A DNA stretch of 64,000 nt from Macrostomum lignano (GCA_002269645.1 NIVC01002275.1:1-64000), one strand, 5' to 3'. Shown: positions 1-56,243, numbered from the stretch's first letter. A program made the numbers and translations. Notes: generated by a model from the letters alone, not told the origin.

Positions 1-15202
<15,202 letters not shown>

Positions 15203-18857: not shown

Positions 18858-31391
<12,534 letters not shown>

Positions 31392-36293: not shown

Positions 36294-39200
36294 CTAGATA
36301 GCCGAGTCAACATCAATGCCATTCAAATAGACTTCTTCTGGATCGTTCGATGGCACTTTGCTGTACTGCACACCGCGATGACTGAATGCCGAGCTGGACG
36401 ACGATGCCGCAGATGCCGTCGCCGCCGCCGTTGCTGAAGATCCCGAGCCGCCGACAATCACTGGCAGAGCTGGCAGGCCGCGTTCATCGCGAAAGAGGCA
36501 ACGGCTGCGAAGAAGAAGCGCGGCCAGAGCAGCCAGGATGCACACCAGTGCCAGCACTGTCCAATGCGAGTGTTATGGACAAGCATTAGGCATTGATTGA
36601 GACCCAATCAGCCTCACTTTCAGTGCCCAATCAGCCTCACTTTCAGTGCCCAATCAGCCTCACTTTCAGTGCCCAATCAGCCTCACTTTCAGTGCCCAAT
36701 CAGCCTCACTTTCAGTGCCCAATCAGCCTCACTTTCAGTGCCCAATCAGCCTCACTTTCAGTGCCCAATCAGCCTCACTTTCAGTGCCCAATCAGCCTCA
36801 CTTTCAGTGCCCAATCAGCCTCACTTTCAGTGCCCAATCAGCCTCTTTCAGTGCCCAATCAGCCTCACTTTCAGTGCCCAATCAGCCTCACTTTCAGTGC
36901 CCAATCAGCCTCACTTTCAGTGCCTAATCAGCCTCTTTCAGTGCCCAATCAGCCTCTTTCAGTGCCCAATCAGCCTCTTTCAGTGTCCAATCAGCCTCAC
37001 TTTCAGTGCCCAATCAGCCTCAATTTCAGCGCCCATTTAGCCTCAATTTCAGTGCCCATTCAGCCTCACTTTCAGTGCCCAACTAGCGCCTTAATGTCAG
37101 TGCCGAATTAGCGTCACTTACCAACAAGCGTGACAACCGCAGCAGTGGCAGCAATATCCCTATTAACCGAGTGATCAGTGCCACTGGGATGCAAATAGAA
37201 CTGAGCCAAATCCAAGCTAGCAATAGCCAGAGCAGCTTGGCTAACACGATAGATATCAGTATGATTAACGTAGCCAGCAGCTGCTAATCGGAGGGAATAG
37301 ACACCGGGAGACAATAGAAAATAGAATTCGCCATTCGGATTAGTCAGCCGACTGTATGGCACCCCATCGATGCTCACGCTGGCTGCAACAATCGGCTTGC
37401 CATCTCTCGAATCAGTCAGCCGACCTCGGATGCCAATAAGTAGCTGAAAAGTTTGTTTATATTTTGTTTTATTTAAAAAAATGACAAAATACTTGTTAGC
37501 GTTTTTGCTACGAGTACGCTACTTATATAGTAGCGCGTAAAGGATGTTCCGAGTATTTTAAGGATAGAACAGTTAAAAATTATAAAAAAATTTATGTAAG
37601 TACAATGTGACTCAAAAGTACCTGGAAACTAGGATTACAAATTAAGGAATTAAGTGATTATAACACTTAAATAATAGAATCACTAATTAAGGAATTAACA
37701 CCTGAATAATAGGATCACTAATAAAGGAATTAACACCTGAATAATACATAGGATCAATAATTAAGGGATTAACACCTGAATAATAGAATCACTAATTAAG
37801 GGATTAACACCTGAATAATAGGATCACTAATTAAGGGATTAACACCCGAATAATAGGATCACTAATAAGGGATTAACACCTGAATAATAGAATCACTAAT
37901 TAAGGGATTAACATCTGAATAATAGGATCGCTAATTAATGTAATAACACCTAAATAATAAAAATCACTAATTAAGGGATTAACATCTGAATAGGATCGCT
38001 AATTAATTTATTAACACCTAAATAATAAAAATCACTAATTAAGGTATTAACACCTGAATAATAGGATCGCTAATTAAGGGATTATTACACAGATAATGAG
38101 ACCGCTAACAAAGGAATAATTCAATTGAACTCAACTACTCCAGGAGATTACTACCACCCTAACACGCATACGCGAATCATACTACTTACAGCGGCAGACA
38201 GAGAGTGCAACAAAGCGTCGGAATTAGCCGCCCACGCAATCATAGACGAAGAGTCCGCAGATTTGCAACAGTTGGGCGCCGCAGCGGCCAATTGTAAATC
38301 TAATCCAGTCTGATTTAATCTCACGCCTAAGCAGCGCAGAATTGGCGCCGATTCTGTAGTACAAGCGGCGCCAGGCGCCAATGGAGGCCGACTTGAGCTG
38401 GACAATCGATGACACCGATCAATAGTATACCGTCTGGCAGATACGGGCAGTCTCGTATTGACTGACTCCGCCATAGCAACAGCGTTAGAAGCATCGGGAC
38501 CGGCCATAACCACAGCAATTCTAACATCATCCTTGGCATTGTTATAATCGGCAGCTTGGAATATTTGCATCGACTCGGGATTGGAATTCTTATTAGTACT
38601 ATTATTAGTAGTATCGCTGCAAGCTGGTGCGGATTTAGTAACAATCAAACGCAGCCGATCCAAACCCGCGGCCAATTCGTTCAGACGAAAATCTCGGCCA
38701 CTATCGGCTTGGCGACACAGCTGCACTGCGAGGCCTAACAGAAGGCGAGGGTGCGACTGGGTTGCCAGGGTAGCTCGGGGCCTACTGGCTGCAGAGTCTG
38801 CTTCTGCTGCTGCTATACCGCTGCTGCTGTTCGAGTTGAAGAAGTCCAAACGGAACTGGGACTGATCTGGGAAGCTGGCAAGAGTGGGATGCATGACTTG
38901 GTTCAGGGGCGATTCTTCAGGTAGGGTTCAGGTGTGATTCTTCAGGTAGGGTTCAGGTTTTCTAAAAAGCACTTTTAAAGGCTGTACGCATTTGTCCCAG
39001 CTGAACTGCACACTGCGATCAGTGCAATTGAGTAAACAAAGAGGAACAAAGACTCGTAAATAATTTCGTCATGTTATGACTGCTGCAAGCACGAGAAGAA
39101 CACAGCTTCTGGAGCTGATGCGCTTGTTTAGCTTTTGCAGCAGCTTCGAGCATGACAGATTAGTGACATGATCAATGATTTATTGCGCTTCTTGAAGGCG

Positions 39201-42200
39201 ATTTAGTGCGGCTATTAAATGGCCAGGGGGCCAATTATGGAGGTCAATTAGAGAAGGGGTCAATTAGAGAGGGGGTCAGTTAGGGAAGTCAATTAGGGAC
39301 GGTTAACTAGAGGGGTCAATTACTTCATAGAAAGTGTAGATTGATTGGGGGTCAATAAGGGATGATAAAAGGTAAACTAGGGACAGTTCGATAAGGGAGG
39401 TGGTTAATTAGAGGGTGTCAATTAGAGGGGTCAATTAGGGGTCAATTAAGGAGAGGGCCAATTAGAGGGGTCTCGATTGGGGAGGGGTAAATTAGAAAGG
39501 AAGGGGTCAATTAGAGAGGGAGGGTCAATTAGAGAGGGAGGGGTCAATTAGAGAGGGATCGATTAGAGGGGGTCAATTAGGAAGGGGTGGCTCGTATAGT
39601 TAGGCGTCAACTAGGATTTAGTGAAGAGAACACACAACTCACAAATCAAAATGAACTCGCATCGAACAGTGCCCAGTTCCAAATAGATTTTGCAATTTTG
39701 CCATCGTCTCAGATCGACTACCAGATTGAGCCAGCAGGTCATTCAACAACGCCTCAGTCACTTCGTCCATGGAAGTCGACAGTCCGCCTTGTTGCAGTCG
39801 AAACTCCAATATTGACGCCGGAACCGACTCTCGAGAATAGGACGACAAAGAATTACAAGCGTAGCCTTTAGAGCAGGCTGTGAGGACAGAGTGGGAGCTA
39901 CGATTGGCTAATACGCAGAATCTACCAGCAGCTGCCAGACTGGCAGAGGCTGATGAATACACCAGCCTGTTGGATGGTGTCTGGTCGACACCGAGCCACA
40001 TGGTGACAGAGTTGCTACCGGCTGATGATGCTGCTGTTGTTGCCAGGGGAATTGGAGAGCCAGTTTTCGCGTCGAGAATTCGACCGCATGCCACTGGGGA
40101 GTGGGGGTTTGGAAAACAGGATTAATAGCAGAGATTGAGAAAACCATCAATTCGTTCACATGCTACAATTTTAGCTTTCAAGGCACGGACTCAAACTTTT
40201 ATACAAGTTGTCAAGATAATGAAACTGAGGAGGCTGGCCCAGCAACTGAGGATCTAAAAGTCTGGCCCAGAAATTGAGGATCTGGGAGGCTGGCCCAGCA
40301 GCTGACACTCTGGGAGGCTGGCCCAGCAACTGACACTGGGAGGCTAGCCCAGCAATTGAGATCTGAGAGGCTGGCCCAGCAACTGACACTCTGGGAGGCT
40401 GGCCCAGCAATTGAGATCTGGGAGGCTGGCCCAGCAATTGAGGATCTGGGAGGCTGGCCCAGCAACTGACACTGGGAGGCTAGCCCAGCAATTGAGATCT
40501 GAGAGGCTGGCCCAGCAACTGACACTCTGGGAGGCTGGCCCAGCAATTGAGATCTGGGAGGCTGGCCCAGCAATTGAGGATCTGGGAGGCTGGCCCAGCA
40601 ACTGACACTGGGAGGCTGGCCCAGCAACTGACACTGGGAGGCTGGCCCAGCAACTGACACTGGGAGGCTGGCCCAGCAGCAGACACTCTGGGAGGCTGGC
40701 ACAGCAACTAAGTAATTTGATGCACTATTTATATTAAGTAGTATGCTAGACTTATTATTGTATTTATAAAGGGTCAGTGGATTACCGTATCGCTTGTAGA
40801 AGTTGGTCAGAACATTTAACAGTGCCAGCTGATTGTCTCTGTACAGGCCGGGCAGACTACCAGCAGCCGGTGTAGAACAGCTGTTTAATCGGAGCGACAT
40901 CTGCGAAAAATTTATTGTGCAATTCAATTAATAAATATAATTTTACTGAGGACTGCATTGAGGATCTGGGATCACAGAATTACATTGAGGATCTGTGGGA
41001 CTCTATTGAGGATCTTGGGATTTTATTGGGGATCTGGGGATTCTATTGAGATCTGGGGATTCTATTGAGATCTGGGGATTCTATTGAGATCTGGGGATTC
41101 TATTGGGGATCTGGTGATTCTATTGAGATCTGGGGATTCTATTGAGATCTGGGGATTCTATTGAGGATCTGGGGATTCTATTGAGATCTGGGGATTCTAT
41201 TGAGATCTGGGGATTCTATTGAGATCTGGGGACTCTATTGAGGATCTGGGGATTCTATTGAGGATCTGGGATTCTATTGAGGATCTGGGGATTCAATTGA
41301 GGATCTGGGGATTCAATTGAGGATCTGGGGATCTATTGAGGATCTGGGGATTCTATTGAGGATCTGGGGATTCTATTGAGGATCTGGGATTCTATTGAGG
41401 ATCTGGGGATTCTATTGAGGATCTGGGGATTCTATTGAGGATCTGGGATTCTATTGAGGATCTGGGGATTCTATTGAGGATCTGGGATTCTATTGAGGAT
41501 CTGGGATTCTATTGAGGATCTGGGGATTCTATTGAGGATCTGGGGATTCTATTGAGGATCTGGGATCTGGGGATTCTATTGAGGATCTGGGATCTGGGGA
41601 TTCTATTGAGGATCTGGGGATTCTATTGAGGATCTGGGATCTGGGGATTCTATTGAGGATTTGGGATCTGGAGATTCTATTGACGATCTGGGATCTGGAG
41701 ATTCTATGGAGATCTGGGATCTGGGGATTCTATCGAGGATTTGGGATCTGGGGATTCTATTGACGATCTGGGATCTGGAGATTCTATTGAGATCTGGGAT
41801 CTGGGGATTCTATTGAGAGCTAAAAAGGTGAAGTGTAGAGCTCACAGACGCAGCGCCAAGACTATTCTGAAAGTGGTTCAACAACTGCAGCTCTCTAGAG
41901 TCGCCACCGCCTCCAACCGTGACCGCAGAGTCAGCAATCGGTCTAACCAAAGCTCCATCAACCAGCTTGCTGGAGATGAAGTGCTTAGCCAAAGATTTAA
42001 CCAATCTAACAACAGTGCTCAAATTCTGCGATAGATCAGTCGATGCCAATCTTGCAATACTCGAGTCGTTAGTGAACCCAGTCCGAAGCGCCATAAATAG
42101 TACTGGCGAAGTCAATTGCTCAGTAGAGTTTTGCATGACAGACACTAGCGATTCCACAGCTGTAGCGGAGCTCAACAACTCAGTGTTAGAGCAATCAGCT

Positions 42201-45200
42201 GATGATCCATTGGTGATTGACAGTTTAGTAGAATTATTACTGCTACTGAATAGCACCGGGACAATTGTAATTCGTAAATTGTTTAGTAGGCTGCGCAGCT
42301 CGTCTGATTGGTTGTAGCCTGAGGTGGGAAGGAAGATCGACGGCAGTTTAGGGGGGGGGGGTCAAGTGACCTCTCTGGTGCAATCCTAAACTCAAATATT
42401 TTTGTCGTCACTATCCTATATTCACAGATGATAACCGCTAGTTCAGAAGGGTCAAATGACCTCCAAAAAGCAGTTAATAATAAAGCTACTAATCTCTCTA
42501 CACTACCTAATAATAGTCTCCGTTATTTCAGGGGGGTCCAATTGACCTCGCTAAAGCAGTTAAAAAAGAAGCAACTAATGTATCTTCACTACCCACTAGT
42601 GTCCGTTATTTAATGGGGGGTCAAATGACCTCCCTCAGCTGCAGTTAATAATAAAGCTTCTAATCTATGTCTCTACACTATCCAACAACCAACTGGATTA
42701 GAAGGGGGGGTCAAGCGACCTTTTATTTTATTCTCACAGGCTAACATAATTGAATCTTAGGGGGGGGTCAAATCAAATGACCTCCACCGTAAACAAGCGC
42801 ACGCACCTGCAGCCAAATGCCTAGCCAATCGTAACAAAACTTCGCCAGTTGCGCTCTCAAATTTGTTCAGCGTGCCAACAAGCAGAGCGCCTGGTAGGCT
42901 ATTTTTAGCATCATCGTCATCGATTCGTCCGCACAGAGTTAGAGCGGTCACCCCATCTGCTAGACTGCGCACAGTCACCAGGCCAGGATACTGCCTAGCT
43001 AAATCTTTCGACTGCTGTCGATAATCGGCAATTGTTGGCAAAAATTCTGAAGCTAAATTGGCCTTCAAACTGAAATCCTGAGCTGCTGACCAATCGGCAA
43101 ATGGGCGAATGCGTAGAGTCGCATTCAGCTGCACTGCCGCCTCGTCTGTGACGGTCACGGTAGCTGAGTAGCTCGAGTACCTGCGGCCGGGTGGTTAATG
43201 TCCAGGTGATTAGTTCGGTGTCCGAAAACTTCATCTAAGGATCTGCCTAGCAACTGAGGATCTGGGAGGCTGGCCCAGAAACTGACACTCTGGGAGGCTG
43301 GCCCAGCAACTGAGGATCTGGGAGGCTGGCCCAGCAACTGAGGATCTGGGAGGCTGGCCCAGCAACTGAGGATCTGGGAGGCTGGCCCAGCAACTGAGGA
43401 TCTGGGAGGCTGGCCCAGCAACTGAGGATCTGGGAGGCTGGCCCAGCAACTGAGGATCTGGGAGGCTGGCCCAGCAACTGAGGATCTGGGAGGCTGGCCC
43501 AGCAACTGAGGATCTGGGAGGCTGGCCCAGCAACTGAGGATCTGGGAGGCTGGCCCAGCAACTGAGGATCTGGGAGGCTGGCCCAGCAACTGAGGATCTG
43601 AGAGGCTGGCCCAGCAACTGAGGATCAGGGAGGCTGGCCCAGCAAATGAGGATCTGGAAGGCTGGCCCAGCAACTGAGGATCTGGGAGGCTGGCCCAGCA
43701 ACTGAGGATCTGGGAGGCTGGCTTAGCAGCTGAGAATCTGGGAGGCTGGCTTAGCAGCTGAGGATCTGGGAGGCTGGCTTAGCAGCTGAGGATCTGGGAG
43801 GCTGGCCCAGAAACTGAGGAACTGGGAGGCTGGCCCAGAAACTGAGGAACTGGGAGGCTGGCTTAGCAGCTGAGGATCTGGGAGGCTGGCTTAGCAGCTG
43901 AGGATCTGGGAGGCTGGCCCAGAAACTGAGGAACTGGGAGGCTGGCCCAGAAACTGAGGAACTGGGAGGCTGGCCCAGAAACTGAGGAACTGGGAGGCTG
44001 GCCCAGAAACTGAGGAACTGGGAGGCTGGCCCAGAAACTGAGGAACTGGGAGGCTGGCTTAGCAGCTGAGGATCTGGGAGGCTGGCTTAGCAGCTGAGGA
44101 TCTGGGAGGCTGGCCCAGAAACTGAGGAACTGGGAGGCTGGCCCAGAAACTGAGGAACTGGGAGGCTGGCCCAGAAACTGAGAATCTGGGAGGCTGGCCC
44201 AGAAACTGAGAATCTGGGAGGCTGGCTTAGCAGCTGAGGATCTGGGAGGCTGGCCCAGAAACTGAGGAACTGGGAGGCTGGCCCAGAAACTGAGGAACTG
44301 GGAGGCTGGCCCAGAAACTGAGGAACTGGGAGGCTGGCTTAGCAACTGAGGAACTGGGAGGCTGGCTTGGCAACTGAGGATCTGGGAGGCTAGCTTAGCA
44401 GCTGAGGATCTGGGAGGCTGGTGGCTCAGCAACTGAGGATCTGGGAGGCTGGCCCAGCAACTGAGGATCTGGGAGGCTGGCCAAGCAACTGAGGATCTGA
44501 GAGACTGGCCCAGCAACTGAGGATCTGGGAGGCTGGCCCAGCAACTGAGGATCTGGGAGGCTGGCCCAGCAACTGAGGATCTGGGAGGCTGGCCCAGCAA
44601 CTGAGGATCTGGGAGGCTGGCCAAGCAACTGAGGATCTGAGAGACTGGCCCAGCAACTGAGGATCTGGGAGGCTGGCCAAGCAACTGAGGATCTGAGAGA
44701 CTGGCCCAGCAACTAAGGACAGTTGAAGCCGGCCAAGCCCCAACAAACTCACCCGCGCTTAACAAACCGCAGCGTGTACGACCCAGGAGCCAACAGTCTC
44801 CAATAGTCGCCATCCTGAGCAGTCAGCACAGCGTGATCAATGCCATCAACCAGGACGCTAACAGCAGACAAAGGTGCTCCAGTATCGAAGTCCAGCACGA
44901 ATCCGCGGACGCCTTTGTGCACAGCTGACATGAACACTAACAGGGGGTAGAAATTCTCAGACCAATACCTGGGCAGCTCGGCAGCGTAGGGATGCTTATT
45001 ACAGCTGAGCTCTAGCGTCAGTTCAAAGCAGTTCGTATTCAGATAATTGTAGTCCTGCATGCCGCCGTACAGGCTGTACCACTGGGCCCCGTTAGTGATG
45101 CCGTCTGTGAATCGTTCTGTGAGGTAAGCTGGACATCTGTGCTGGCTGGTCATCCGGGGGTGACTGCTGGAGTAGGCTCTGGCCAGCTGGCGAAATGTGG

Positions 45201-48200
45201 CATCGTCTGGAGCTCTGGAATTCACAGTGTTGCGACGCGATCGATCAATTATGAAATCTGATGCCATATAGCATTGATCTGTTTGGGTATTATGGCTAAT
45301 AAGTATTATAAAAATGTAATTTAACTTGATCATAAGGAACCAAGGACTACGTCATAAGGAATCCAAGAATCGGGTTATAAAAATTCAAGGATTGGGTCAT
45401 AATTAGGAATCTAGGATTGAGTCACAATACGAGCTAATTCAAGGATTGGGTCATGAAGAATCAAATATTGCGTCATAAGGAACCAAGGATTGGGTCATAA
45501 GAATTTAAGGATTGGGTCATAAGAATTCAAGGATTGGGTCATAAGAATTCAAGGATTGGGTCATAAAGAATCAAATATTGCGTCATAAGGAACCAAGGAT
45601 TGCGTCATAAGGAATCCAAGAATAGGGTTATAAAATTCAAGGATTGGGTCATAAGGAATCTAAGGATTGGATCATAAGAATTCTGGGAATGGAAATGAAG
45701 ATTTTCTGTGTCATTCGAATTTAGGGATTGGATCATAGGGATTGTCTGATTAGGTTAAAAACGCTTTTACAAGATTGGTCATTGAGATTTTTTTACTGTT
45801 TTTTTACGACTACGGCCCGATTACATTCGTATTATAACAATCAAAGCATCGCAGCTTACTTAGAGTAGACGCTAGCGCCCTCCTTGGTGCCGTCGAACGG
45901 ATAGTTTGCAACAACGGCGCCGCCGTGCAAATTAGCGCTGAGGACAAACGGCCATCTGAGTATGCGCGAAGGAAGTGAAATATAGAGTTTAAAAAGAAAT
46001 GCTATTATGTCTCGCTTTTACATGTCGTCAAGGTCAATCGGAATTTCTTAAAGTCAAACAATCGGAATTTTCCAAAGTCAAACAATTAGGAGCTTTTAGG
46101 GTCAAACGATTGAATTTTTCAAAGTCAAACAATTAGGAGCTTTTAGGGTCAAACGATTGAATTTTTCAAAGTCAAATAATCAGAACTTTTGAGGTCAAAC
46201 AATCTGATGTTTTATAAGGTCAAAAAATTAATTTTTTTCAAGGTCAAACAGTTGAAATTTTTCAAGGTCAAATAATCGGCATTTTCCAAGGCCAAACAAT
46301 CGGAATTTTACAAGGTCAAACAGTTGGAATTTTCCAAGGTCAAACAATTGGAATTTTCTAAGGTCAAACAATCGGAATTTTACAAGGTCAAACAGTTGGA
46401 ATTTTCCAAGGTCAAACAATCGGAATTTTACAAGGTCAAATGATCGGTACTTTTCAAGGTCAAACTATTGGAATTTATTTAAGGCCAAACAATTTTACTT
46501 TTTAAGGTCAAACAATCGGAATATTCCAAGGTCAAACAATTGGAATTTTCCAAGGTCAAACGCGGAAATTTCCAAGGTCAAACAATCGGGTTTCTCCAAA
46601 ATTTTCTCAGGGTATTTCAGGGTATCTCAGATATCTCATCTCAGGTATTTCAGGGTATCTAAGAGTACTTATTTCTAAAAGCTCAGCAAAAACGAAACCC
46701 CCTAACCTGGCCAGCCAGGCGCGCACAGCCGCAGTCTCCGGCTGCTCCGGTTTCTCGTCCGGTTCGCCGGCGCGAAATTGATCGGGAAAATTTCTATTCA
46801 AATCGATGCCATTAGCGTTAGACCGGCCAATAACGCCGTTAGAATCGCCAGCATGGGAACTCTCGTATCCGTCTGGGTTCATGCTGGGCATGATGTGCAC
46901 CCGAGTGCTGGCCAGCAGATCTTTGACTAACGGAGTTCGGTCGTAATTGCGGCAAAGAAAATCGGCTAAATAAAGAAGCACTTCCCGGCTCACTACTTCG
47001 TTGCCGTGCATGTTGCCAACGTACTTGAATTCGGGTACGCCTGGCAACAGTGAAGTCAAGGTGGGGTGTGCATATATAAGTTGCGAGAATTTCCAATAAA
47101 ACTTGAGGAACTTGGAAATTCGCCTATATCAAGATCAAATAAGTTTTTTAGTCCCTATCAAGGTCAAGCTATCTGAAAATCCCCATTGAAGTCAAGTTAT
47201 TTGGAATTCCCCATCAAGATTGAGTTATTTGGAATTCCCCATCAAGATTGAGTTATTTGGAATTCCCCATCAAGATAGAGTTATTTGGAATTCCCCATCA
47301 AGATTGAGTTATTTGGAATTCCCCATCAAGATAGAGTTATTTGGAATTCCCCATCAAGATAGAGTTATTTGGAATTCCCCATCAAAGTCAATTAATATGG
47401 AATTTCCTATCAAGGTCACGTTTTTTGGAATTCCCCACCAAGGTCAATTTTTGGAATTTCCCACCAAGGTTATTTTTTTGGAATTTCCTATCAAGGTCAA
47501 GTCATTTATAATTATCTAGATAGTTATTATCTATCAAGATTAATATAAAAACTCAGTAGGCATATAAAAAATTTAATACTACTACATCGATCGACACTAG
47601 CTACCGATATGTATCGAACGGAAAAAAATAACCAACGGAGAAAAGGCACAAACCTGGCCTATGCGATCCAGGCAACTGGCCGGAAAACTCAATAACCCAC
47701 AGTTCTCGATTTTGAACAGATTTTCCAATCGAATAAAGGCGAGTCACGCTTGGACAAGCTGAATGAATTCTGTGCAGGTAGGCCGTCAGAGCGTCGTAAT
47801 TATGGTGCCTGGAGGAAATCCGATTAGTAACGATTATTAAGTCAGTATTTGAATATAATACTTAAATTTCGCATTACTGCCCATAGACAGAATTTCTGTT
47901 GGCCTCTCTTTAACTGTCTCTCCCTCTACCTGTCTCCCTCTACCTGTCTCCCTCTACCTGTCTCTCTCTACCTGTCTCTCCCTCTACCTGTCTCTCTCTA
48001 TCTGTCTCTCTCTACCTGTCTCTCTCCCTCTACCTGTCTCTCTCCCTCTACCTGTCTCTCCCTCTGCCTGTCTCTCTCCCTCTACCTGTCTCTCTTCTAC
48101 CTGTCTCTCCCTCTACCTGTCTCTCTCTACCTGTCTCTCTCTCTACCTGTCTCTCTCTACCTGTCTCTCCCTCTACCTGTCTCTCTCTACCTGTCTCTCT

Positions 48201-50703
48201 CTCTACCTGTCTCTCTTCTACCTGTCTCTCCCTCTGCCTGTCTCTCTCCCTCTACCTGTCTCTCTTCTACCTGTCTCTCCCTCTACCTGTCTCTCTCTAC
48301 CTGACTCTCTCTACCTGTCTCTCCCTCTGCCTGTCTCTCTTCTACCTGTCTCTCTCTCTCTACCTGTCTCTCTCTACCTGTCTCTCTCTACCTGTCTCTC
48401 TCTATCTGTCTCTCTTCTACCTGTCTCTCCCTCTGCCTGTCTCTCTCCCTCTACCTGTCCCTCTTCTACCTGTCTCTCCCTCTGCCTGTCTCTCTTCTAC
48501 CTGTCTCTCTCCCTCTACCTGTCTCTCTCCCTCTACCTGTCATTCTCTACCTACATCTCTATCTCTATAAAATAAAAAACAGTAAGCAAACTCACACAAG
48601 CGACTTGCTATCAACTGGAACATAGTCTTTGAACACTTTCCGTTCTCGATCTGATCGCATTTGATTTGTAAATTTGACAAGCCTCAATATTGGCGAAGAT
48701 TCGTTCCGCGGGTACTGATCGCCGACACTAAGAATTGAGAAGGCGGATAAAAAACCTATCAGCAGCATAGCAACTAGTATGTCTCGTCAGCTAATATGTC
48801 ATCGTTAGTACTCGTAATTCAAAAACATTTTAATTTGAAAATCAGACAAATGCTTATTATTAATTCATACTGAAGCATAGATAGTCGCTATACCAGTCAT
48901 TCTCGTAATCTACTTTGTCATAATATTTAAAAAGCGAAGGACTTACAGACTCTAGATAAAGTCTGGTATAGTAGTACAATTATGGAAAACAACATATAAG
49001 CGAAACTCGATATCAGACAAATGCCTCATTGAAATTTCATAACTGGCACAAACTGAAATTTGCACCTGTCAATCTCGTCATCTATTCTGTCATCATTAGC
49101 GAGTTTATATAAATACTAACTATTCCCTACATTAGAGTCTCGTTCTCAGACAAATGCCTCATTAAGATCACGGAGCAGACACTGATTATGCCTGTCAGTT
49201 CGTCATCTAAATTGTCATCACTGCTCACACAATGACCTAAAGCACTCTATGTACTTGATAAGCTCATAAATCATATAAATCTAAGATATAAACTCAGGAC
49301 TCAGGGCTCAGACAAATGCCTCATTAAATTTCACTAATTGGCACAAACTACTCGAGTTTGCACCTGTCAATCTCGTCATCTATTGTCATCACAGCGAGTC
49401 CGCATAGTCACTAACAATGTGCATTGAGCAATCAAGTCTGTAAGCCGGAATTAACATCCACCAGCAGCCAGGCAGCTCTGAAGTCAGCGACAGCTGCAGC
49501 GGTGTGCTGTTGCCAGCTGGGTTGCTCTGGCACCAGTATTAAACTTGACCGGGCTTGACAACTAATTGCATGGCAACTAGCACCCATTGGTCAAGGGATC
49601 AAATCTGGTGCCGTGTGCTTATCTGATTGCAGGGCAACTAGCACCCATTGGTCAAGGGATCAAATCTGGTGCCGTGTGTTTATCTGATTGCAGGGCAACT
49701 AGCACCCATTGGTCAAGGGATCAAATCTGGTGCCGTGTGCTTATCTGATTGTATGGCAACTGGCACCCATTGGTCAAGGGATCAAATCTGGTGCCGTGTG
49801 CTTATCTGATTGCAGGGCAACTAGCACCCATTGGTCAAGGGATCAAATCTGGTGCCGTGTGCTTATCTGATTGCAGGGCAACTAGCACCCATTGGTCAAT
49901 AGTCCATCAGTCCAGCTTATCTTTGACATTTGACATTATATTAAGAAAAGACAAACTTTATTTCCAATGGGGGAACAAAAACAACTTCAGTTGTGCAGCT
50001 TCGCTCACCTGACGTCTCGACGCAATCTCAGTCTGTATTCATGGTCATCAGCCAGGACTCCCCAGTTGATAAACTGCCATTGCAAGTGATTAGTCAAATT
50101 AAACGCCCGATGCCTCGCTTTTAACGCGCCGCTTCGATAGCAATTGTCTATGGTAATGATGGATTTAACCTTGCAGCCATTGTCAGCCAGATTGTTAACC
50201 AACTGTTCAACTAACTCAGGCTGTCCGCTTAAATCTTTTTCGCAGGCAAGAATTTGACATATTCGCTTCTTAGTTATGGATTCATAACCGACCAAGTCTA
50301 ATTGACGCAATGCTTTTAAAACGTTTGTATTGTTGCTCCTAGTTGGTAGTAGAAATTCTGCAACAATTTTACTCCTTGTCGAGGTTGAAGATGGCAAATT
50401 AACAAAGTCTTTTAGTAGCATCAGTTGCTTAGCAACTGAACTAGCAGCAGCTTGACTAGTCGCTGCGTAGGTTAATATCAGCATTGGTTTGACTGACACC
50501 TGATCAGCGCTATCATCGCTGCTTGATAACCGATAAACATTAACACCTTCAAGGTTACTGATTGCGAATCTTGGCTGAGTTGTAACATTTTCAGCTAATA
50601 ATAACGCCAGCTGGGATAGCCGCAACAACATAATTGTCAGCATTATAAGCCATCGGTTGCCATGGAAACGGGAAAGACGATTGGCATTTGAATTTGGCAG
50701 CAT
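36294..50703 (-). CDS. CPD: Carboxypeptidase D-like metallocarboxypeptidase (M14B), type I membrane protein, about 1500 aa
   Basis: Exons 50703-50009, 48727-48596, 47808-47654, 47040-46707, 45955-45860, 45214-44753, 43180-42807, 42318-41846, 40900-40786, 40093-39643, 38874-38190, 37443-37122, 36556-36294; all GT-AG and phase-consistent. Domain 1 is intact: [56 protein letters not shown], and a transthyretin-like KGVRGFV segment. Two degenerate repeats follow, then a TM ([17 protein letters not shown]) and a tail with YSKV and acidic DPEEVY. Confidence 0.9.
36595..37110. repeat. Minisatellite, 23-nt unit
   Basis: CCCAATCAGCCTCACTTTCAGTG repeated. Confidence 0.95.
37655..38110. repeat. AT-rich minisatellite, about 33-35-nt unit
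   Basis: ATTAACACCTGAATAATAGGATCACTAATTAAGGG variants. Confidence 0.85.
39235..39585. repeat. Degenerate G-rich tandem repeat (GGGGTCAATTAGAG)
   Basis: Direct observation. Confidence 0.75.
40225..40705. repeat. 27-nt CAGATCCTCA-family minisatellite (inverted orientation)
   Basis: GGAGGCTGGCCCAGCAACTGAGGATCTG variants. Confidence 0.95.
40950..41815. repeat. Minisatellite, about 20-nt unit with GAGGATCTG core
   Basis: GAGGATCTGGGGATTCTATT repeated. Confidence 0.95.
43250..44715. repeat. 27-nt CAGATCCTCA-family minisatellite (inverted)
   Basis: AACTGAGGATCTGGGAGGCTGGCCCAGC repeated. Confidence 0.97.
45335..45700. repeat. Minisatellite, about 22-nt unit
   Basis: GGATTGGGTCATAAGAATTCAA variants. 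Confidence 0.85.
46030..46590. repeat. Minisatellite, 24-nt unit
   Basis: AAGGTCAAACAATCGGAATTTTCC variants. Confidence 0.9.
47165..47500. repeat. Minisatellite, 27-nt unit
   Basis: GAGTTATTTGGAATTCCCCATCAAGAT repeated. Confidence 0.9.
47915..48570. repeat. CT-rich minisatellite (TCTACCTGTCTCTC)
   Basis: Direct observation. Confidence 0.9.
48842..48923 (-). ncRNA. Degenerate U15-like C/D snoRNA copy (possible pseudogene)
   Basis: C box altered to TTATGA; D' guide TAGATTACGAG has a mismatch; D guide shortened to GCATTTG-T-CTGA. Confidence 0.55.
49013..49096 (-). ncRNA. SNORD15: Box C/D snoRNA, U15/SNORD15-like (subfamily B)
   Basis: Minus strand: ATGATGA (C box)...TAGATGACGAG-A-TTGA (D' guide and box)...ATGAGGCATTTG-T-CTGA (D guide and box). 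Terminal stem AACTCG/CGAGTT. Both guides are complementary to the conserved LSU rRNA segment GCCAAAUGCCUCGUCAUCUAA. Confidence 0.85.
49146..49221 (-). ncRNA. SNORD15: Box C/D snoRNA, U15-like (subfamily A, shifted D' register)
   Basis: GTGATGA...TTAGATGACGA-A-CTGA...ATGAGGCATTTG-T-CTGA on the minus strand. Confidence 0.85.
49308..49392 (-). ncRNA. SNORD15: Box C/D snoRNA, U15-like (subfamily B)
   Basis: GTGATGA...TAGATGACGAG-A-TTGA...ATGAGGCATTTG-T-CTGA; flanking GGACTC/GAGTCC stem. Confidence 0.85.
49567..49897. repeat. 58-60-nt minisatellite (copy 1 of duplicated cassette)
   Basis: GGCAACTAGCACCCATTGGTCAAGGGATCAAATCTGGTGCCGTGTGCTTATCTGATTGCA, about 5.5 units. Confidence 0.95.
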
Positions 50704-51202
50704 GTCTCCTTATGTATTACGATGCGTGCATGCAAAAAGCACTCTAGATGGAATGTAGCTCGAAGATATTCTGAAATGTCAAAGTATAAAAAGTAATTGA
50801 TAGTTCAGAAATTATCATTTTACAGACGAATAACTAACTAAATAATTTATCAATATTACAGACATCTAATACTAAAAGCTAATGAGATATTTTTTAATTA
50901 CTGACACCTGACACGTTTTTAAGGCACTCACTGACACCTAACACCCAACTTTACAATTTAAATGTAAACCCAAAAAACATTATCTGTGCTATACTAAAAC
51001 CGAAATCATTAGTAAATCAAACAAACCACCATTTAAACGATATGATATTAAAAAGGCGGCAAATGTTCTTTTACCCGATACAAATGGTATTTTATATTTA
51101 TTCATAATAGGAAAGTATTAACAAGTCGTTAAAAAGTCGTTTGAGTAAGAGAAAAATGAACCTTGAAAACTATAATCATGGATTCATAATAATTTTTGCA
51201 AC

Positions 51203-52172
51203 ACTGAGGATCTGGGAGGCTGGCCCAGCAACTGAGGATCTGGGAGGCTGGCACAGCAACTGACACTCTGGGAGGCTGGCCCAGCAACTGACACTCTGGG
51301 AGGCTGGCCCAGCAACTGAGGATCTGTGAGACTGGCCCAGCGACTGAGGATCTGGGAGGCTGGCCCCGCAACTGAGGATCTGGGAGGCTGGCCCAGCAAC
51401 TGGGGATCTGGGAGGCTGGCCCAGCAACTGAGGATCTGGGAGGCTGGCCCAGCAACTGAGGATCTGGGACGCTGGCCCAGCAACTGAGGATCTGGGAGGC
51501 TGGCCCAGCAACTGAGTATCTGGGAGGCTGGCCCAGCAACTGAGGATCTGGGAGGCTGGCCCAGCAACTGACATTCTGGGAGGCTGGCCCAGCAACTGAC
51601 ACTCTGGGAGGCTGGCCCAGCAACTGAGGATCTGGGAGGCTGGCCCAGCAACTGAGGATCTGGGAGGCTGGCCAGCAACTGAGGATCTGGGAGGCTGGCC
51701 CAGCAACTGAGGATCTGGGAGGCTGGCCCAGCAACTGAGGATCTGGGAGGCTGGCCCAGCAACTGACACTCTGGGAGGCTGGCCCAGCAACTGACACTCT
51801 GGGAGGCTGGCCCAACAACTGACACTCTGGGAGGCTGGCCCAGCAACTGACACTCTGGGAGGCTGGCCCAGCAACTGACACTCTGGGAGGCTGGCCCAGC
51901 AACTGACACTGAGAGGCTGGCCCAGCAACTGACACTGAGAGGCTGGCCCAGCAACTGACACTGAGAGGCTGGCCCAGCAACTGACACTGAGAGGCTGGCC
52001 CAGCAACTGACACTGAGAGGCTGGCCCAGCAACTGACACTGAGAGGCTAGCCCAGCAACTGACACTGAGAGGCTGGCCCAGCAACTGACACTGAGAGGCT
52101 GGCCCAGCAACTGACACTGAGAGGCTGGCCCAGCAACTGACACTGAGAGGCTGGCCCAGCAACTGAGGATCT
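51203..52172. repeat. 27-nt CAGATCCTCA-family minisatellite (LEM-CPD spacer)
   Basis: Same unit as 43250-44715. Confidence 0.97.
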
Positions 52173-52958
52173 AGAAGAAATACATTTTGTTTTTCCGTTC
52201 AAAGACGTTCTAGTAGACTCCAAATGGATTTTAACTAATTTGCTGCAGATTGCATAATAACTATTACAAAATGGCGCAAGGCAAAAGTTTTAATATACGT
52301 AAATTCTGATCACTTTAGTACAAAAATACTTTAACTACTACTTGTTACTATTAGTAGTACGAGCATTACTAATTGATTTAAAGTATGCAAGCAATATAAA
52401 CTGGGACAGCGAAGTTGCACCCGGCTAGAGAGAGTCATAAAATGCGGTAAGCAAAAACACCTACTGGATAATAATATTTAATAAATTGAACAAGTGAGTG
52501 GCAGAGGTACAAAAGGAGCAGTTTGTATACATAAATCTTTATTTAAAAAAACTTTGCAAAGTAATGTTTGAAAAAAATTGACGGTGTTATTATAAATAAA
52601 TGTGAATACAGCAACGGGTTACTAAAAAGAAATTACTGCCTTACTTCCATACGACACACTTTTACAATAATAGAACTTACATGTATAGCCATGTTTATAT
52701 TATAACTGAATAAATCACAGACTATATTCAACACAAAGACTATATTCCAACACAAAGACCCTATTTAACACAAAGACCCTCTACAGCACAGACTCCACCC
52801 TAGTCAACACTAAGACCCTACTCAACACAAAGACCCAGGTTATATTCAAAGAAGTGCACCGGGAACCAGGGGAATTTAAAGTTCGCGCAGTTAAGTCAGG
52901 TCAATAAAAAACGGACACAACGAACATGATCAGGTAGACTGCGATGCAATCTCCGCAT

Positions 52959-55900
52959 TCAATGAGAGATCTCTGGCACCGGATTTTCGTACAGAGGATC
53001 AAAATGAAGCAGGAGAAAAGCTACAGCGCCAATCAGAGCCAGGGCTAGAATGCAGTTGAGCAGAGACGGACGAAACCGACTGGGAGCTGCGGCGGCTCCT
53101 GGGGCCGGACGAGCGCCAGACGGCGAGCCCACCTTACCATAGTAACCAGTTCCGGCGTCATTCTCGTGCAACGGGCGTCGGCGATAGGTTTCGCGGAAAA
53201 CTGAACCGCCACCGCTGCCGAAGCTGCCATCGTCGGCTGGTGAAGCTCCGGGACGTTGCGGAGTGGAATCGAACCTGCGACCTGCTGGGCTGGATGCGGC
53301 AGCGGCGGCTGCGCCTGCGGCGGAGAACATCGAAGCGTCGCGAGTGTCCGGACTGCGAATTAACAATGGGAAAGACTTGTTGGGCGAATTTACACTGACA
53401 AGTACTTGTTAGCTACAGTACACTGACAAAGATTTGTTTGTAAATGTACATAGAAAAAGTCTGAATTGCCCAACGTACACTGACAAAGACACAATGACCC
53501 AATGTACAAAGACTCAATGGCCCAATGTACACTGACAAAGACTCAATGGCCCAATATACACTAACAAAGACTCAATGGCCCAATGTACACTGAAAAAGAC
53601 TCAATGGCCCAATGTACACTGACTAAGACTCAATGGCCCAATATACACTGACAAAGACTCAATGGCCAAATGTACACTGAAAAAGACTCAATGCCTCAAT
53701 GTACACTGACAAAGCCTCAATGGCCCAATATACACTAACAAAGACTCAATGGCCCAATGTACACTGAAAAAGAATCAATGGCCCAATGTACACTGAAAAA
53801 GACTCAATGGCCCAATATACACTGACAAAGACTCAATGGCCCAATGTACACTGACATACTCAATAGTCCAATGTACACAAACAGAAAAAGTTATATCTTT
53901 AAATACTTGTTAAGAATCTCAAAAAGTTACCTGTTGTAAACTCAAACAAATAGCCAAAACTGAAAATGTTCATAAATAACATTTTTATTCCAGCACCGAA
54001 AAAACTTATACATAATAATACAATCGCTGATAACCATTATCAACAGAATTTTCCTACCAAATAGCTATAGTGACAGGAACACAGCAGTCACAAACAGTGA
54101 TGTTGATCGACAAGTCGTACTTTAAATTAGATGGCCTGTGTGGTAATTCAATCAGATTCTTTACGTTTTTACTGATAATTAAGATGAGAAAAGTGCGAAA
54201 TATTCTACTCAAAGACACCAACCAATTTCCTATATATTATGAGTTTCACACATCGCAAGTAGTAAAGTTGAGTTCAATAAAACAAACGATTTATTACCTT
54301 ACTGGCTGTCTTCTGGCGCCGTCTCCGTCACTGACATCGCTTTCGCTAAAAATACAATAAGTATTATTTATATTTACAACTCTCCATAATAGATCAATAA
54401 TGGAATTAAAATCCATAGGATATACAATAAATTAAGCTTTTGGACTCAGACAAATGCCTCATTAAGATCACTTTAAAAAGGCACAGGTTATGCCTGTATC
54501 AGTTCGTCATCTAAATTGTCATCATTGTAGTTTAGGCTATTATTATCAAACATAAAAAAATCGCGACACTCGCTATCAGACAAATGCCTCTTTGAATTTC
54601 ATAACTGGCACAAACTGATTATTTGCACCTGTCAATCTCGTCATCTATTCTGTCATCATTAGCGAGTTGATAAAAACTGACTAAACTCATAAACACTATG
54701 CAATAGGGTCTTGTTCTCAGACAAATGCCTCATTAAGATCACAGAGCAGACACTGATTATTTATGTCTGTCAGTTCGTCATCTAAATTGTCATCACTGCT
54801 AACACAATGACCCAAAGTACTCTATGTACTTGATAAGCTCATAAATAATATAAATCTAAGATATATACTCAGGACTCAGGGCTCAGACAAATGCCTCATT
54901 AAATTTCACTAATTGGCACAAACTACTCGAGTTTGCACCTGTCAATCTCGTCATCTATTGTCATCACAGCGAGTCCGCACAGTCACTAACAATGTGCATT
55001 GAGCAATAAAGCTATCTGTAAGCCGGAATTAACATCCACCAGCAGCCAGGACGCTCTGAAGTCAGCGACAGCTGCAGCGGTGTGCTGTTGCCAGCTGGGT
55101 TGCTCTGGCACCAGTATTAAACTTGACCGGGCTTGACAACTAACTGCATGGCAACTAGCACCCATTGGTCAAGGGATCAAATCTGGTGCCGTGTGCTCAT
55201 TTAATTGCATGGCAACTAGCACCCATTGGTCAAGGGATCAAATCTGGTGCCGTGTGCTTATCTGATTGCATGGCAACTAGCACCCATTGGTCAAGGGATC
55301 AAATCTGGTGCCGTGTGCTTATCTGATTGCATGGCAACTAGCACCCATTGGTCAAGGGATCAAATCTGGTGCCGTGTTTATCTGATTGCATGGCAACTAG
55401 CACCCATTGGTCAAGGGATCAAATCTGGTGCCGTGTGCTCATTTAATTGCATGGCAACTAGCACCCATTGGTCAAGGGATCAAATCTGGTGCCGTGTGCT
55501 TATCTGATTGCATGGCAACTAGCACCCATTGGTCAAGGGATCAAATCTGGTGCCGTGTGCTTATCTGATTGCATGGCAACTAGCACCCATTGGTCAAGGG
55601 ATCAAATCTGGTGCCGTGTTTATCTGATTGCAGGGCAACTAGCACCCATTGGTCAAGGGATCAAATCTGGTGCCGTGTGCTTATCTGATTGCATGGCAAC
55701 TAGCACCCATTGGTCAAGGGATCAAATCTGGTGCCGTGTTTATCTGATTGCATGGCAACTAGCACCCATTGGTCAAGGGATCAAATCTGAGTGATTATCC
55801 AGCATATTAAGCTGCATGGCAACTAAGCGGACTAAGACTAGGACTAAGACTTAATTTATGGATAAAGACAACCTTACTATAATTACTAGTTTAAATTCTG

Positions 55901-56243
55901 TCTCAAAATCAGACAAATGCCTTATAAAAATTCACATTAAAAAGCATAGATTTATTTGCTATGCCAATCATACTCGTCATCTATTTTGTCATCATTTTTG
56001 AGAGCAGATTTTTTGCACAAAAAGAATCAAATCCTTGATTTGTAAATAAAAGAACACTTACCTATCTTCAGCTTGGTCGGTGCTGCACACAGACACAAAC
56101 TGTTGTCCAGAGCGCAGTCTATATAATTTACGACGCATCAAGTGCCTAGTAGTGTCAGTAACTGGGGGCACATTTGCGTCGCCCATGTGTACAGCAAGGT
56201 CATCGCGTAGTTCCGCATCAGTTAGTTGATTAATTTCGTCCAT
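52959..56243 (-). CDS. LEM-domain inner nuclear membrane protein (emerin/LAP2beta-like), 207 aa
   Basis: Exons 56243-56062, 54345-54298, 53352-52959 (phase 2/2). N-terminal LEM motif (INQLTDAELRDDL...PPVTDTTRHLMRRKLYRL), low-complexity linker, C-terminal TM (CILALALIGAVAFLLLHF) and a short lumenal tail. Confidence 0.85.
53390..53880. repeat. Minisatellite, 30-nt unit
   Basis: CAATGTACACTGACAAAGACTCAATGGCCC variants. Confidence 0.9.
54446..54525 (-). ncRNA. SNORD15: Box C/D snoRNA, U15-like (subfamily A)
   Basis: ATGATGA...TTAGATGACGA-A-CTGA...ATGAGGCATTTG-T-CTGA. The internal region has diverged from the 49146/54717 copies, but boxes and guides are conserved. Confidence 0.85.
54576..54659 (-). 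ncRNA. SNORD15: Box C/D snoRNA, U15-like (subfamily B)
   Basis: ATGATGA...TAGATGACGAG-A-TTGA...GAGGCATTTG-T-CTGA; perfect 8-bp terminal stem ACTCGCTA/TAGCGAGT. Confidence 0.88.
54717..54796 (-). ncRNA. SNORD15: Box C/D snoRNA, U15-like (subfamily A)
   Basis: GTGATGA...TTAGATGACGA-A-CTGA...ATGAGGCATTTG-T-CTGA. Confidence 0.85.
54883..54967 (-). ncRNA. SNORD15: Box C/D snoRNA, U15-like (subfamily B)
   Basis: Appears identical to the 49308-49392 copy. Confidence 0.85.
55145..55790. repeat. 58-60-nt minisatellite (copy 2 of duplicated cassette)
   Basis: Same unit, about 10.5 units. Confidence 0.95.
55909..55995 (-). ncRNA. SNORD15: Box C/D snoRNA, U15-like (divergent)
   Basis: ATGATGA...TAGATGACGAG-T-ATGA...AGGCATTTG-T-CTGA; perfect terminal stem TCTCAAAA/TTTTGAGA. 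Confidence 0.8.

What the first reader, a model, noticed from the sequence alone, without database searches (positions are those of the whole stretch)
49146..54796. snoRNA paralog subfamily with a 1-nt D' register shift predicts a new rRNA methylation site
Seen: copies 49146, 54446 and 54717 read TTAGATGACGA-A-CTGA. Copies 49013, 49308, 54576, 54883 and 55909 read TAGATGACGAG-(A/T)-(T/A)TGA. The fifth base upstream of D' is A in the first group and C in the second. The shift is retained in 54446, whose interior has otherwise diverged, and that group has a canonical CTGA D' box. Inference from the +5 rule: subfamily A would methylate the U next to the conserved Gm (yeast U2289 equivalent), near helix 71. 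This would be neofunctionalisation of a duplicated guide RNA.
Basis: inference. Interest (0 to 1): 0.75.

Follow-up and report, generated by a model that had tools for sequence, protein, structure and literature searches.

The report
Flatworm snoRNA paralogs with shifted guide
A flatworm (Macrostomum lignano-like) carries many intronic copies of a well-known ribosomal-RNA methylation guide, and one conserved subfamily has its guide shifted by one base, which should mark the neighbouring U as well; this is a neat, testable but unproven example of an ordinary way in which methylation maps evolve.

Summary
Nine box C/D snoRNA copies and one relic lie on the minus strand. They sit in intron 1 of a LEM-domain gene and in intron 1 of the neighbouring carboxypeptidase D gene. 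The best protein match is Macrostomum lignano.

All copies are double guides of the U15/snR75+snR13 type. The D guide targets the conserved Am (yeast A2281). The D' guide targets the Gm 7 nt downstream (yeast G2288).

Three copies (49146, 54717, 54446) have D' = CUGA one base closer to the guide, so position 5 faces the next U. In 59 distinct double-guide homologues from environmental eukaryotes, no clear D' box sits in that register. 52 sit in the G register, so the G register is ancestral.

Group A looks selected:
- Boxes and guides show 0/52 differences between old paralogues, against about 50% in loop and flanks.
- All six group-A copies in a roughly 92%-identical M. lignano locus keep the C-to-D' segment unchanged.
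- A neighbouring fourth family member decays.

The consulted methylation maps list no Um next to this Gm. The Um itself is untested, and group A lacks the terminal stem that group B has. This is a new variant of a known kind, of moderate interest.

The parts
54717..54795 (-). Group A snoRNA (U register). C box TGATGA, D' guide CAATTTAGATGACGAA, D' CTGA, internal hairpin CAGACA/TGTCTG, C' TGATCT, D guide TAATGAGGCATTTGT, D CTGA.
54446..54524 (-). Group A snoRNA, an old paralogue. Its interior and flanks have diverged, while boxes and both guides are identical to the other group A copies. Its 3' end lies 100 nt upstream of the intron 1 acceptor.
49146..49220 (-). Group A snoRNA in the duplicated cluster, in carboxypeptidase D intron 1.
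54883..54966 (-). Group B2 snoRNA (G register). D' guide CAATAGATGACGAGA, D' TTGA. It has a 10-bp internal hairpin and an external stem GGACTC/GAGTCC.
54576..54658 (-). Group B1 snoRNA (G register). D' guide CAGAATAGATGACGAGA, D' TTGA, external stem ACTCGC/GCGAGT. The D guide has one edge substitution (CAAAGAGG).
55909..55994 (-). Group B3 snoRNA (G register). D' guide CAAAATAGATGACGAGT, D' ATGA, with a 12-bp terminal stem. It is the best Rfam hit to Drosophila snoMe28S-Am2589, at 29.2 bits against a cut-off of 37. It lies 67 nt downstream of the exon 1 donor.
49308..49391 (-). Group B2 snoRNA, the duplicate of 54883.
49013..49095 (-). Group B1 snoRNA, the duplicate of 54576.
48842..48923 (-). 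Decaying B3-like copy. C box TTATGA, D' guide TAGATTACGAGA, D guide AATAAGCATTTGT. It serves as an internal control for neutral decay.
48734..48807 (-). Relic of a further copy (CGATGAC..TTAGCTGACGAGA). It has no D guide and no canonical D box.
56062..56243 (-). Host gene exon 1, coding for the LEM domain from the ATG at 56243. The donor is AG|GTAAGT.
54298..54345 (-). Host gene exon 2 (48 nt). Intron 1 (56061-54346) holds five snoRNAs and a 61-bp minisatellite.
52959..53352 (-). Host gene exon 3, ending in a tail-anchor transmembrane segment and the stop codon. The assembled 207-aa protein is 200/207 identical to M. lignano BOX15_Mlig005543g1.
50009..50703 (-). First coding exon of the downstream carboxypeptidase D gene (232 aa, donor GTGAGC). 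The second snoRNA cluster (49391-48734) lies in the intron that follows it.
55145..55789 (.). 61-bp minisatellite that travels with the B2-A-B1 unit. A second array lies at 49565-49899.

Best explanation
These are intron-encoded box C/D snoRNAs of the U15 / snR75+snR13 double-guide family, in a Macrostomum lignano-like flatworm genome.

Every intact copy uses its D guide to direct fibrillarin to the conserved A (yeast 25S A2281 equivalent).
- In subfamilies B1-B3 the D' guide directs methylation of the conserved G 7 nt downstream (yeast G2288 equivalent).
- Subfamily A arose from a B1/B2-like copy. One base was lost between guide and D' box, and a T-to-C change made D' a canonical CUGA.
- The 11-bp guide-target duplex slid by one base, so position 5 now faces the U that follows the Gm (yeast U2289 equivalent, at the start of helix 71).

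Group A is therefore predicted to add a Um next to the Gm while still guiding the Am.

What is shown: the anatomy, the register difference, the ancestral state, the conservation pattern and the genomic context.
What is inferred: expression of group A, and the Um itself.
For: - Nine copies carry C, D', C' and D boxes and both guides.
- There are weak but consistent Rfam similarities to TtnuCD10, snoMe28S-Am2589, snR75, plant SNOR75, SNORD15 and Plasmodium snoR21.
- The two guides imply targets 7 nt apart, which matches the Am/Gm pairs in fly, Arabidopsis (one snoRNA, AtU15), yeast, human and Dictyostelium.
- The +5 rule is stated in PMC8522698.
- Group A has D' at offset 1 after AGATGACGA, and group B at offset 2. 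Of 59 distinct environmental double-guide homologues, 52 have D' at offset 2 and none has a clear D' box at offset 1.
- Both groups form 11 contiguous base pairs at guide positions 2-12. The target base is U (+1) for group A and G for group B.
- Selection: A_54446 against the other group A copies shows 0/52 differences in boxes plus guides, against 37/81 and 46/88 in loop plus flanks (Fisher p = 2e-10 and 1e-12).
- All six group-A copies in the roughly 92%-identical M. lignano locus L121 keep TGATGACAATTTAGATGACGAACTGA.
- The neighbouring fourth member decays differently in each locus.
- Every copy has an internal D'-C' hairpin, with different sequences in different lineages.
Against: - There are no expression or modification data.
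- Group A copies have no terminal stem next to boxes C and D. They have at best a weak distal external stem, whereas every group B copy has a 6-12 bp stem.
- The copies sit in tandem or segmental duplicates, so gene conversion could inflate the apparent conservation.
- The D and D' target sites overlap, so conservation of the D' guide could serve binding rather than methylation.
- All Rfam hits are below the gathering thresholds.
- The rRNA of this organism was not available. The target sequence is the universally conserved one, taken from prior knowledge.
Confidence: 0.55

Rival explanations
1. Group A is a functional snoRNA, but its D' element does not create a Um. It would be kept for the shared Am guide. 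Its D' antisense element would act only as extra pre-rRNA pairing (a chaperone or helper for the D guide), or would still contribute to Gm through tolerance of the ruler.
For: The D guide is identical in groups A and B. The D and D' targets overlap and adjoin on the rRNA. The maps read here list no Um at this position in any organism.
Against: The change made D' a canonical CUGA. The 11-bp duplex is kept exactly at positions 2-12 in the new register. The rule that exactly the fifth nucleotide is modified is the stated norm. A helper role would not need a fixed distance from guide to box, yet all 9 group A copies keep it.
Confidence: 0.28
2. Group A copies are non-functional or barely expressed pseudogenes. 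Their uniformity would come from recent duplication and gene conversion inside a repeat-rich array.
For: They lack a terminal stem. They sit in a copy-number-variable tandem unit. Copies 49146 and 54717 are recent duplicates.
Against: A_54446 and its counterpart L121:11403 are old paralogues with about 50% different loops and flanks, yet show 0/52 differences in boxes and guides. Conversion tracts would not stop exactly at box and guide borders. A true decaying member in the same array shows broken boxes and guides.
Confidence: 0.1
3. The group A D' guide has moved to a different RNA target, such as another rRNA site, an snRNA or a tRNA, and the match to the 28S site is only a leftover.
For: This could not be searched, because the organism's rRNAs and snRNAs were not available.
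Against: The guide still has 11 contiguous base pairs with the ancestral site, and only one base of the antisense core differs from group B.
Confidence: 0.05

Closest known systems
U15 double guide (Arabidopsis AtU15-1a/1b/2; vertebrate SNORD15, Rfam RF00067)
   Same: One box C/D snoRNA carries both guides: D' for the Gm (At Gm2289) and D for the Am 7 nt upstream (At Am2282). It is multi-copy. Group B of the window has the same two guides in the same registers.
   Different: Rfam SNORD15 scores are only 16-19 bits against a cut-off of 75. Group A has the D' box one base closer. No Um next to the Gm is listed for Arabidopsis, human or yeast.
Yeast snR75 (Gm2288) and snR13 (Am2280/Am2281); Drosophila snoRNA:CD7 (Gm2666) and CD51a-c = Me28S-Am2589 (Am2659)
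   Same: The antisense elements and the target sites are the same.
   Different: In yeast and fly the two guides sit on separate snoRNAs, whereas here they are on one RNA. Scores are below the gathering cut-offs: snR75 24.1 against 40, and snoMe28S-Am2589 29.2 against 37.
Tetrahymena TtnuCD10 and Plasmodium snoR21 (Rfam RF02287, RF01864)
   Same: They share the double-guide layout, with GAUGACGAG(A/U)AUGA at D' (G register) and GAGGCAUUUG before D (alignments).
   Different: Their interiors are much longer. Scores are 27-30 bits against cut-offs of 85-90.
Neighbouring Nm sites guided by the same or paralogous snoRNAs (for example Drosophila 28S Am1691/Gm1692 by CD4a/b, 28S Gm3324/Gm3326 by CD55 and CD33a/b, 18S Um1357/Gm1359 by CD38/CD39)
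   Same: Adjacent or near-adjacent 2'-O-methyls are specified by related guides (Table 1 of PMC11014333). This is the general process proposed here.
   Different: Those sites are mapped experimentally. Here the shifted site is only predicted, and it lies beside a Gm whose guide register is otherwise invariant in the homologues sampled.

Membership tests
Box C/D snoRNA (fibrillarin guide RNA) | Box C (RUGAUGA) near the 5' end and box D (CUGA) near the 3' end | tested here: met
   All 8 intact copies have (A/G)TGATGA and CTGA. Copy 48842 has TTATGA.
Box C/D snoRNA (fibrillarin guide RNA) | Internal D' and C' boxes, with an antisense element of at least 10 nt ending one base upstream of D or D' | tested here: met
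   D' is CTGA in group A and TTGA or ATGA in group B. C' is TGATCT or TGAAAT. The complementarity is 11-12 bp at positions 2-12/13.
Box C/D snoRNA (fibrillarin guide RNA) | Terminal stem bringing boxes C and D together | tested here: inconclusive
   Group B has 6-12 bp terminal or external stems. Group A has none adjacent to the boxes, and only a weak distal GGGTC/GACCC pairing in some copies.
Box C/D snoRNA (fibrillarin guide RNA) | Stable, fibrillarin-bound RNA that directs 2'-O-methylation | not testable with these tools
   No expression or modification data were available.
U15 / snR75+snR13 guide family (Rfam clan CL00045 members SNORD15 and snR75; also SNOR75, snoMe28S-Am2589) | Score at or above the Rfam gathering threshold | tested here: not met
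   There were no matches at gathering thresholds. The best sub-threshold hits were snoMe28S-Am2589 at 29.2 against 37, snR75 at 24.1 against 40, SNOR75 at 24 against 50, and SNORD15 at 19 or less against 75.
U15 / snR75+snR13 guide family | D guide complementary to ..CAAAUGCCUC.. with the third A opposite position 5 | tested here: met
   The element GAGGCATTTGT-CTGA is present in all copies except 48842. Copy 55909 has AAGGCATTTGT. The target base is A, 7 nt upstream of the G.
U15 / snR75+snR13 guide family | D' guide complementary to ..CUCGUCAUCUA.. with the G opposite position 5 | tested here: met
   This feature is met by group B and by 52 of 59 environmental homologues. It is NOT met by group A, where U is opposite position 5. 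Group A is therefore a register variant of the family rather than a standard member.

The most novel reading that the evidence does not exclude
Group A installs a lineage-specific Um directly 3' of the near-universal Gm at the base of helix 71. The A and B paralogues would then write a Gm-Um doublet, which could differ between tissues or stem cells if the two host introns are expressed differently. It would be a documented case of a new rRNA modification site created by a one-base indel next to a D' box in a duplicated guide.
Probability: 0.5. Interest if true: 0.5.

Novelty: new variant of a known kind. Interest (0 to 1): 0.4.

Why it matters
It would be a clean natural experiment on how rRNA methylation maps change. 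The same guide family has two registers and a known direction of change, with signs of selection on the derived form. The animal is kept in the laboratory and has RNAi and transgenesis.

The predicted site lies in a highly conserved stretch of large-subunit rRNA, near intersubunit helix 71, where the consulted maps of other organisms show only the Gm. If the Um is absent, the case becomes a useful counter-example: a conserved D' antisense element that is kept for pairing rather than for methylation.

Tried and rejected
- Rfam at gathering thresholds gave nothing. A permissive scan of the whole window gave no other credible RNA.
- The 232-aa ORF had no homologues in the word-indexed protein search. 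It was later identified as carboxypeptidase D exon 1 by synteny.
- The carboxypeptidase fragment matched proteins from several animal phyla at about 60% identity or less, and so did not identify the organism.
- Exact look-ups of window ORFs found no contig.
- My first exon 2 and exon 3 splice model for the LEM gene was wrong. I corrected it against the M. lignano protein.
- I considered that group B's D' box was misassigned and group A was the normal register. This was rejected, because 52 outgroup sequences place CUGA-like boxes at group B's offset.
- The planarian RiboMeth-seq paper covers 28S only up to about nt 1600, so it gives no information on this site.
- Literature searches for Um2289, Um3772 and Um3793 found no such site.
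- I did not build a covariance model from the environmental homologues. They were selected by the same two guide cores, so the window copies would match by construction.

Full report
**Observation**

The string TCAGACAAATGC (reverse complement of D guide plus D box) occurs nine times on the + strand between 48842 and 55909, against 0.38 expected by chance.

In RNA sense every copy has the layout of a double-guide box C/D snoRNA of 75-86 nt: (A/G)UGAUGA, antisense element 1, D', a short hairpin, C', antisense element 2, CUGA.

Three copies (49146-49220, 54717-54795, 54446-54524) share the identical 26-nt segment TGATGACAATTTAGATGACGAACTGA. Five copies (49013, 49308, 54576, 54883, 55909) read ..TAGATGACGAG(A/T)(T/A)TGA.

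Two further copies were not listed:
- A decaying one at 48842-48923.
- A relic at about 48734-48807.

Copies 49013-49391 and 54576-54966 belong to a segmental duplication that also carries a 61-bp minisatellite. So 49146 and 54717 are recent duplicates, and 54446 is the informative old paralogue.

**What the RNAs are**

Rfam gives no match at gathering thresholds. The permissive scan hits only families that guide one pair of sites: Tetrahymena TtnuCD10, Drosophila snoMe28S-Am2589, yeast snR75, plant SNOR75, SNORD15 and Plasmodium snoR21.

Read together, the two antisense elements specify one contiguous target..CAAA*UGCCUCG*UCAUCUA... The A* lies opposite position 5 of the D guide. The G* lies opposite position 5 of the group B D' guide, 7 nt downstream. 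The rRNA sequence used there is the conserved large-subunit sequence taken from prior knowledge.

The same 7-nt pair is mapped in several organisms:
- Am2281/Gm2288 in yeast.
- Am2282/Gm2289 in Arabidopsis, where a single snoRNA, AtU15, guides both.
- Am2659/Gm2666 in Drosophila.
- Am2547/Gm2554 in Dictyostelium.
- Am3785/Gm3792 in human.

Group B is therefore an ordinary U15-type double guide.

**The register shift**

After AGATGACGA, the D' box starts at offset 2 in group B (GA|TTGA, GT|ATGA) and at offset 1 in group A (A|CTGA).

To learn which is ancestral, I scanned metagenome contigs for AGATGACGA-N35-65-GAGGCATTTG. This pattern does not depend on the register. Among 59 distinct sequences with a D box in the expected place:
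- 52 have a CUGA-like D' at offset 2.
- 6 have only a degenerate box.
- 1 is an overlap artefact.
- None has a clear D' box at offset 1.

The G register is thus ancestral and strongly conserved, and group A is the derived exception. Group A shares the TGACAGG junction with B1 and B2. This fits an origin from such a copy by loss of one base plus a T-to-C change that made D' canonical.

In both groups the contiguous duplex is 11 bp and covers guide positions 2-12. In group A it has slid one base along the rRNA, gaining a U-A pair at its 5' end and losing a G-C pair at its 3' end. The U after the Gm now lies opposite position 5. The rule that exactly the fifth nucleotide is methylated is stated in PMC8522698.

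**Evidence that group A is maintained**

- A_54446 against A_49146 or A_54717: 0 of 52 positions differ in C-to-D' plus C'-to-D. In loop plus 25-nt flanks, 37/81 and 46/88 positions differ (Fisher p = 2e-10 and 1e-12).
- All lineages keep a hairpin between D' and C', but with different sequences: CAGRCA/TGTCTG, AGGCA/TGCCT, GGTGCAAA/TTTGTGCC, GGCATAG/CTATGCT.
- The decaying fourth member of the array shows what unconstrained change looks like in the same place. It has a broken C box and damaged guides, and the damage differs between the two loci.

**Organism and a second locus**

The host gene of the upper cluster encodes a 207-aa LEM-domain, tail-anchored protein (exons 56243-56062, 54345-54298, 53352-52959). 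It is 200/207 identical to Macrostomum lignano BOX15_Mlig005543g1.

The corresponding region of assembly GCA_002269645.1 (locus L121) has the same gene order, with the LEM gene followed by carboxypeptidase D. It is only 90-93% identical in unique DNA. It is therefore a homeologue, a divergent haplotype or a sibling species.

L121 holds 19 copies:
- B3, B2, A, B1 and A' in LEM intron 1.
- At least four 2.2-kb tandem units of [B2, A, B1, decayed copy] in the first intron of the carboxypeptidase gene.

All six group-A copies there keep the 26-nt C-to-D' segment unchanged. Their loops and flanks differ from the window's counterparts at 4-17 positions.

The 232-aa ORF at 50703-50009 is the first coding exon of the carboxypeptidase D gene. 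The lower cluster therefore sits in that gene's first intron. Several snoRNAs thus share one intron.

**What is not shown**

- There is no evidence of expression or of the Um.
- Group A has no terminal stem next to boxes C and D. Every group B copy has 6-12 bp. Group A processing and stability are therefore uncertain.
- Gene conversion within the arrays could add to the uniformity. It would not explain why divergence stops exactly at box and guide borders in the old paralogue.
- The D and D' targets overlap, so a pairing-only role for the D' element remains possible.
- The organism's own rRNA was not available.

**Comparison and novelty**

None of the maps I could read lists a Um after this Gm: D. 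melanogaster; A. thaliana with human and yeast columns; the plant review; Dictyostelium. Text searches for Um2289, Um3772 and Um3793 found nothing. The only flatworm RiboMeth-seq study does not reach this part of 28S. No paper on Macrostomum snoRNAs turned up.

Creation of neighbouring sites by related guides is well known. The Drosophila table shows several such pairs. The mechanism is therefore ordinary, and the specific site and the departure from an otherwise fixed register are the new parts.

**Verdict**

I rate it a new variant of a known kind, with interest 0.4. My confidence that group A really writes the Um is about 0.55.

Noticed in passing
window 52959-56243 (-) and locus L121: The window is Macrostomum lignano-like. 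Its LEM protein is 200/207 identical to BOX15_Mlig005543g1. The syntenic DNA of GCA_002269645.1 contig NIVC01000073.1 is only 90-93% identical, so it is a homeologue, a divergent haplotype or a sibling species.
   Followed up: partly
window 48734-49900 versus L121 15344-22849: The unit [B2, A, B1, decayed copy, plus the 61-bp minisatellite] is single in the window's carboxypeptidase D intron. It is repeated at least four times, with a period of about 2.2 kb, in the other assembly. This is copy-number variation of a snoRNA array.
   Followed up: partly
window 50009-50703 (-): This 232-aa ORF has no detectable homologue in the word-indexed search and no Pfam domain. By synteny it is the first coding exon of the carboxypeptidase D gene. 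It has a signal-peptide-like start and is about 90% identical to the M. lignano copy.
   Followed up: yes
window 48842-48923; L121 16261-16385, 18468-18592, 20629-20711: The fourth array member is decaying in a different way in each locus: C box TTATGA or lost, D' guide TAGATTAC or TAAATGAC, and a deletion in the D guide. This looks like independent loss of a redundant G-register copy.
   Followed up: partly
whole window, e.g. 24907-28565, 43245-44719, 51203-52172, 40229-40709, 21579-21755: Introns and spacers are packed with 14-60 bp minisatellites (58 Tandem Repeats Finder rows). The 28-bp unit GCCCAGCAACTGAGGATCTGGGAGGCTG recurs at four or more places, once inverted. (TGTC)n arrays lie at 8681-9173 and 29629-30133.
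   Followed up: no
window 24447-24875 (+), 11024-11263 (+), 37117-37518 (-), 46607-47059 and 47604-47861 (-): Other coding exons were seen: an S-adenosylhomocysteine hydrolase-like exon, a leucine-rich-repeat exon, and carboxypeptidase D exons (Peptidase_M14 and CarboxypepD_reg).
   Followed up: partly
window 54576-54658 (-): Copy B1 in the LEM intron has a T-to-A change at the outer edge of the D guide (CAAAGAGGCATTTGT). This change is absent from its duplicate at 49013 and from the L121 copies.
   Followed up: no
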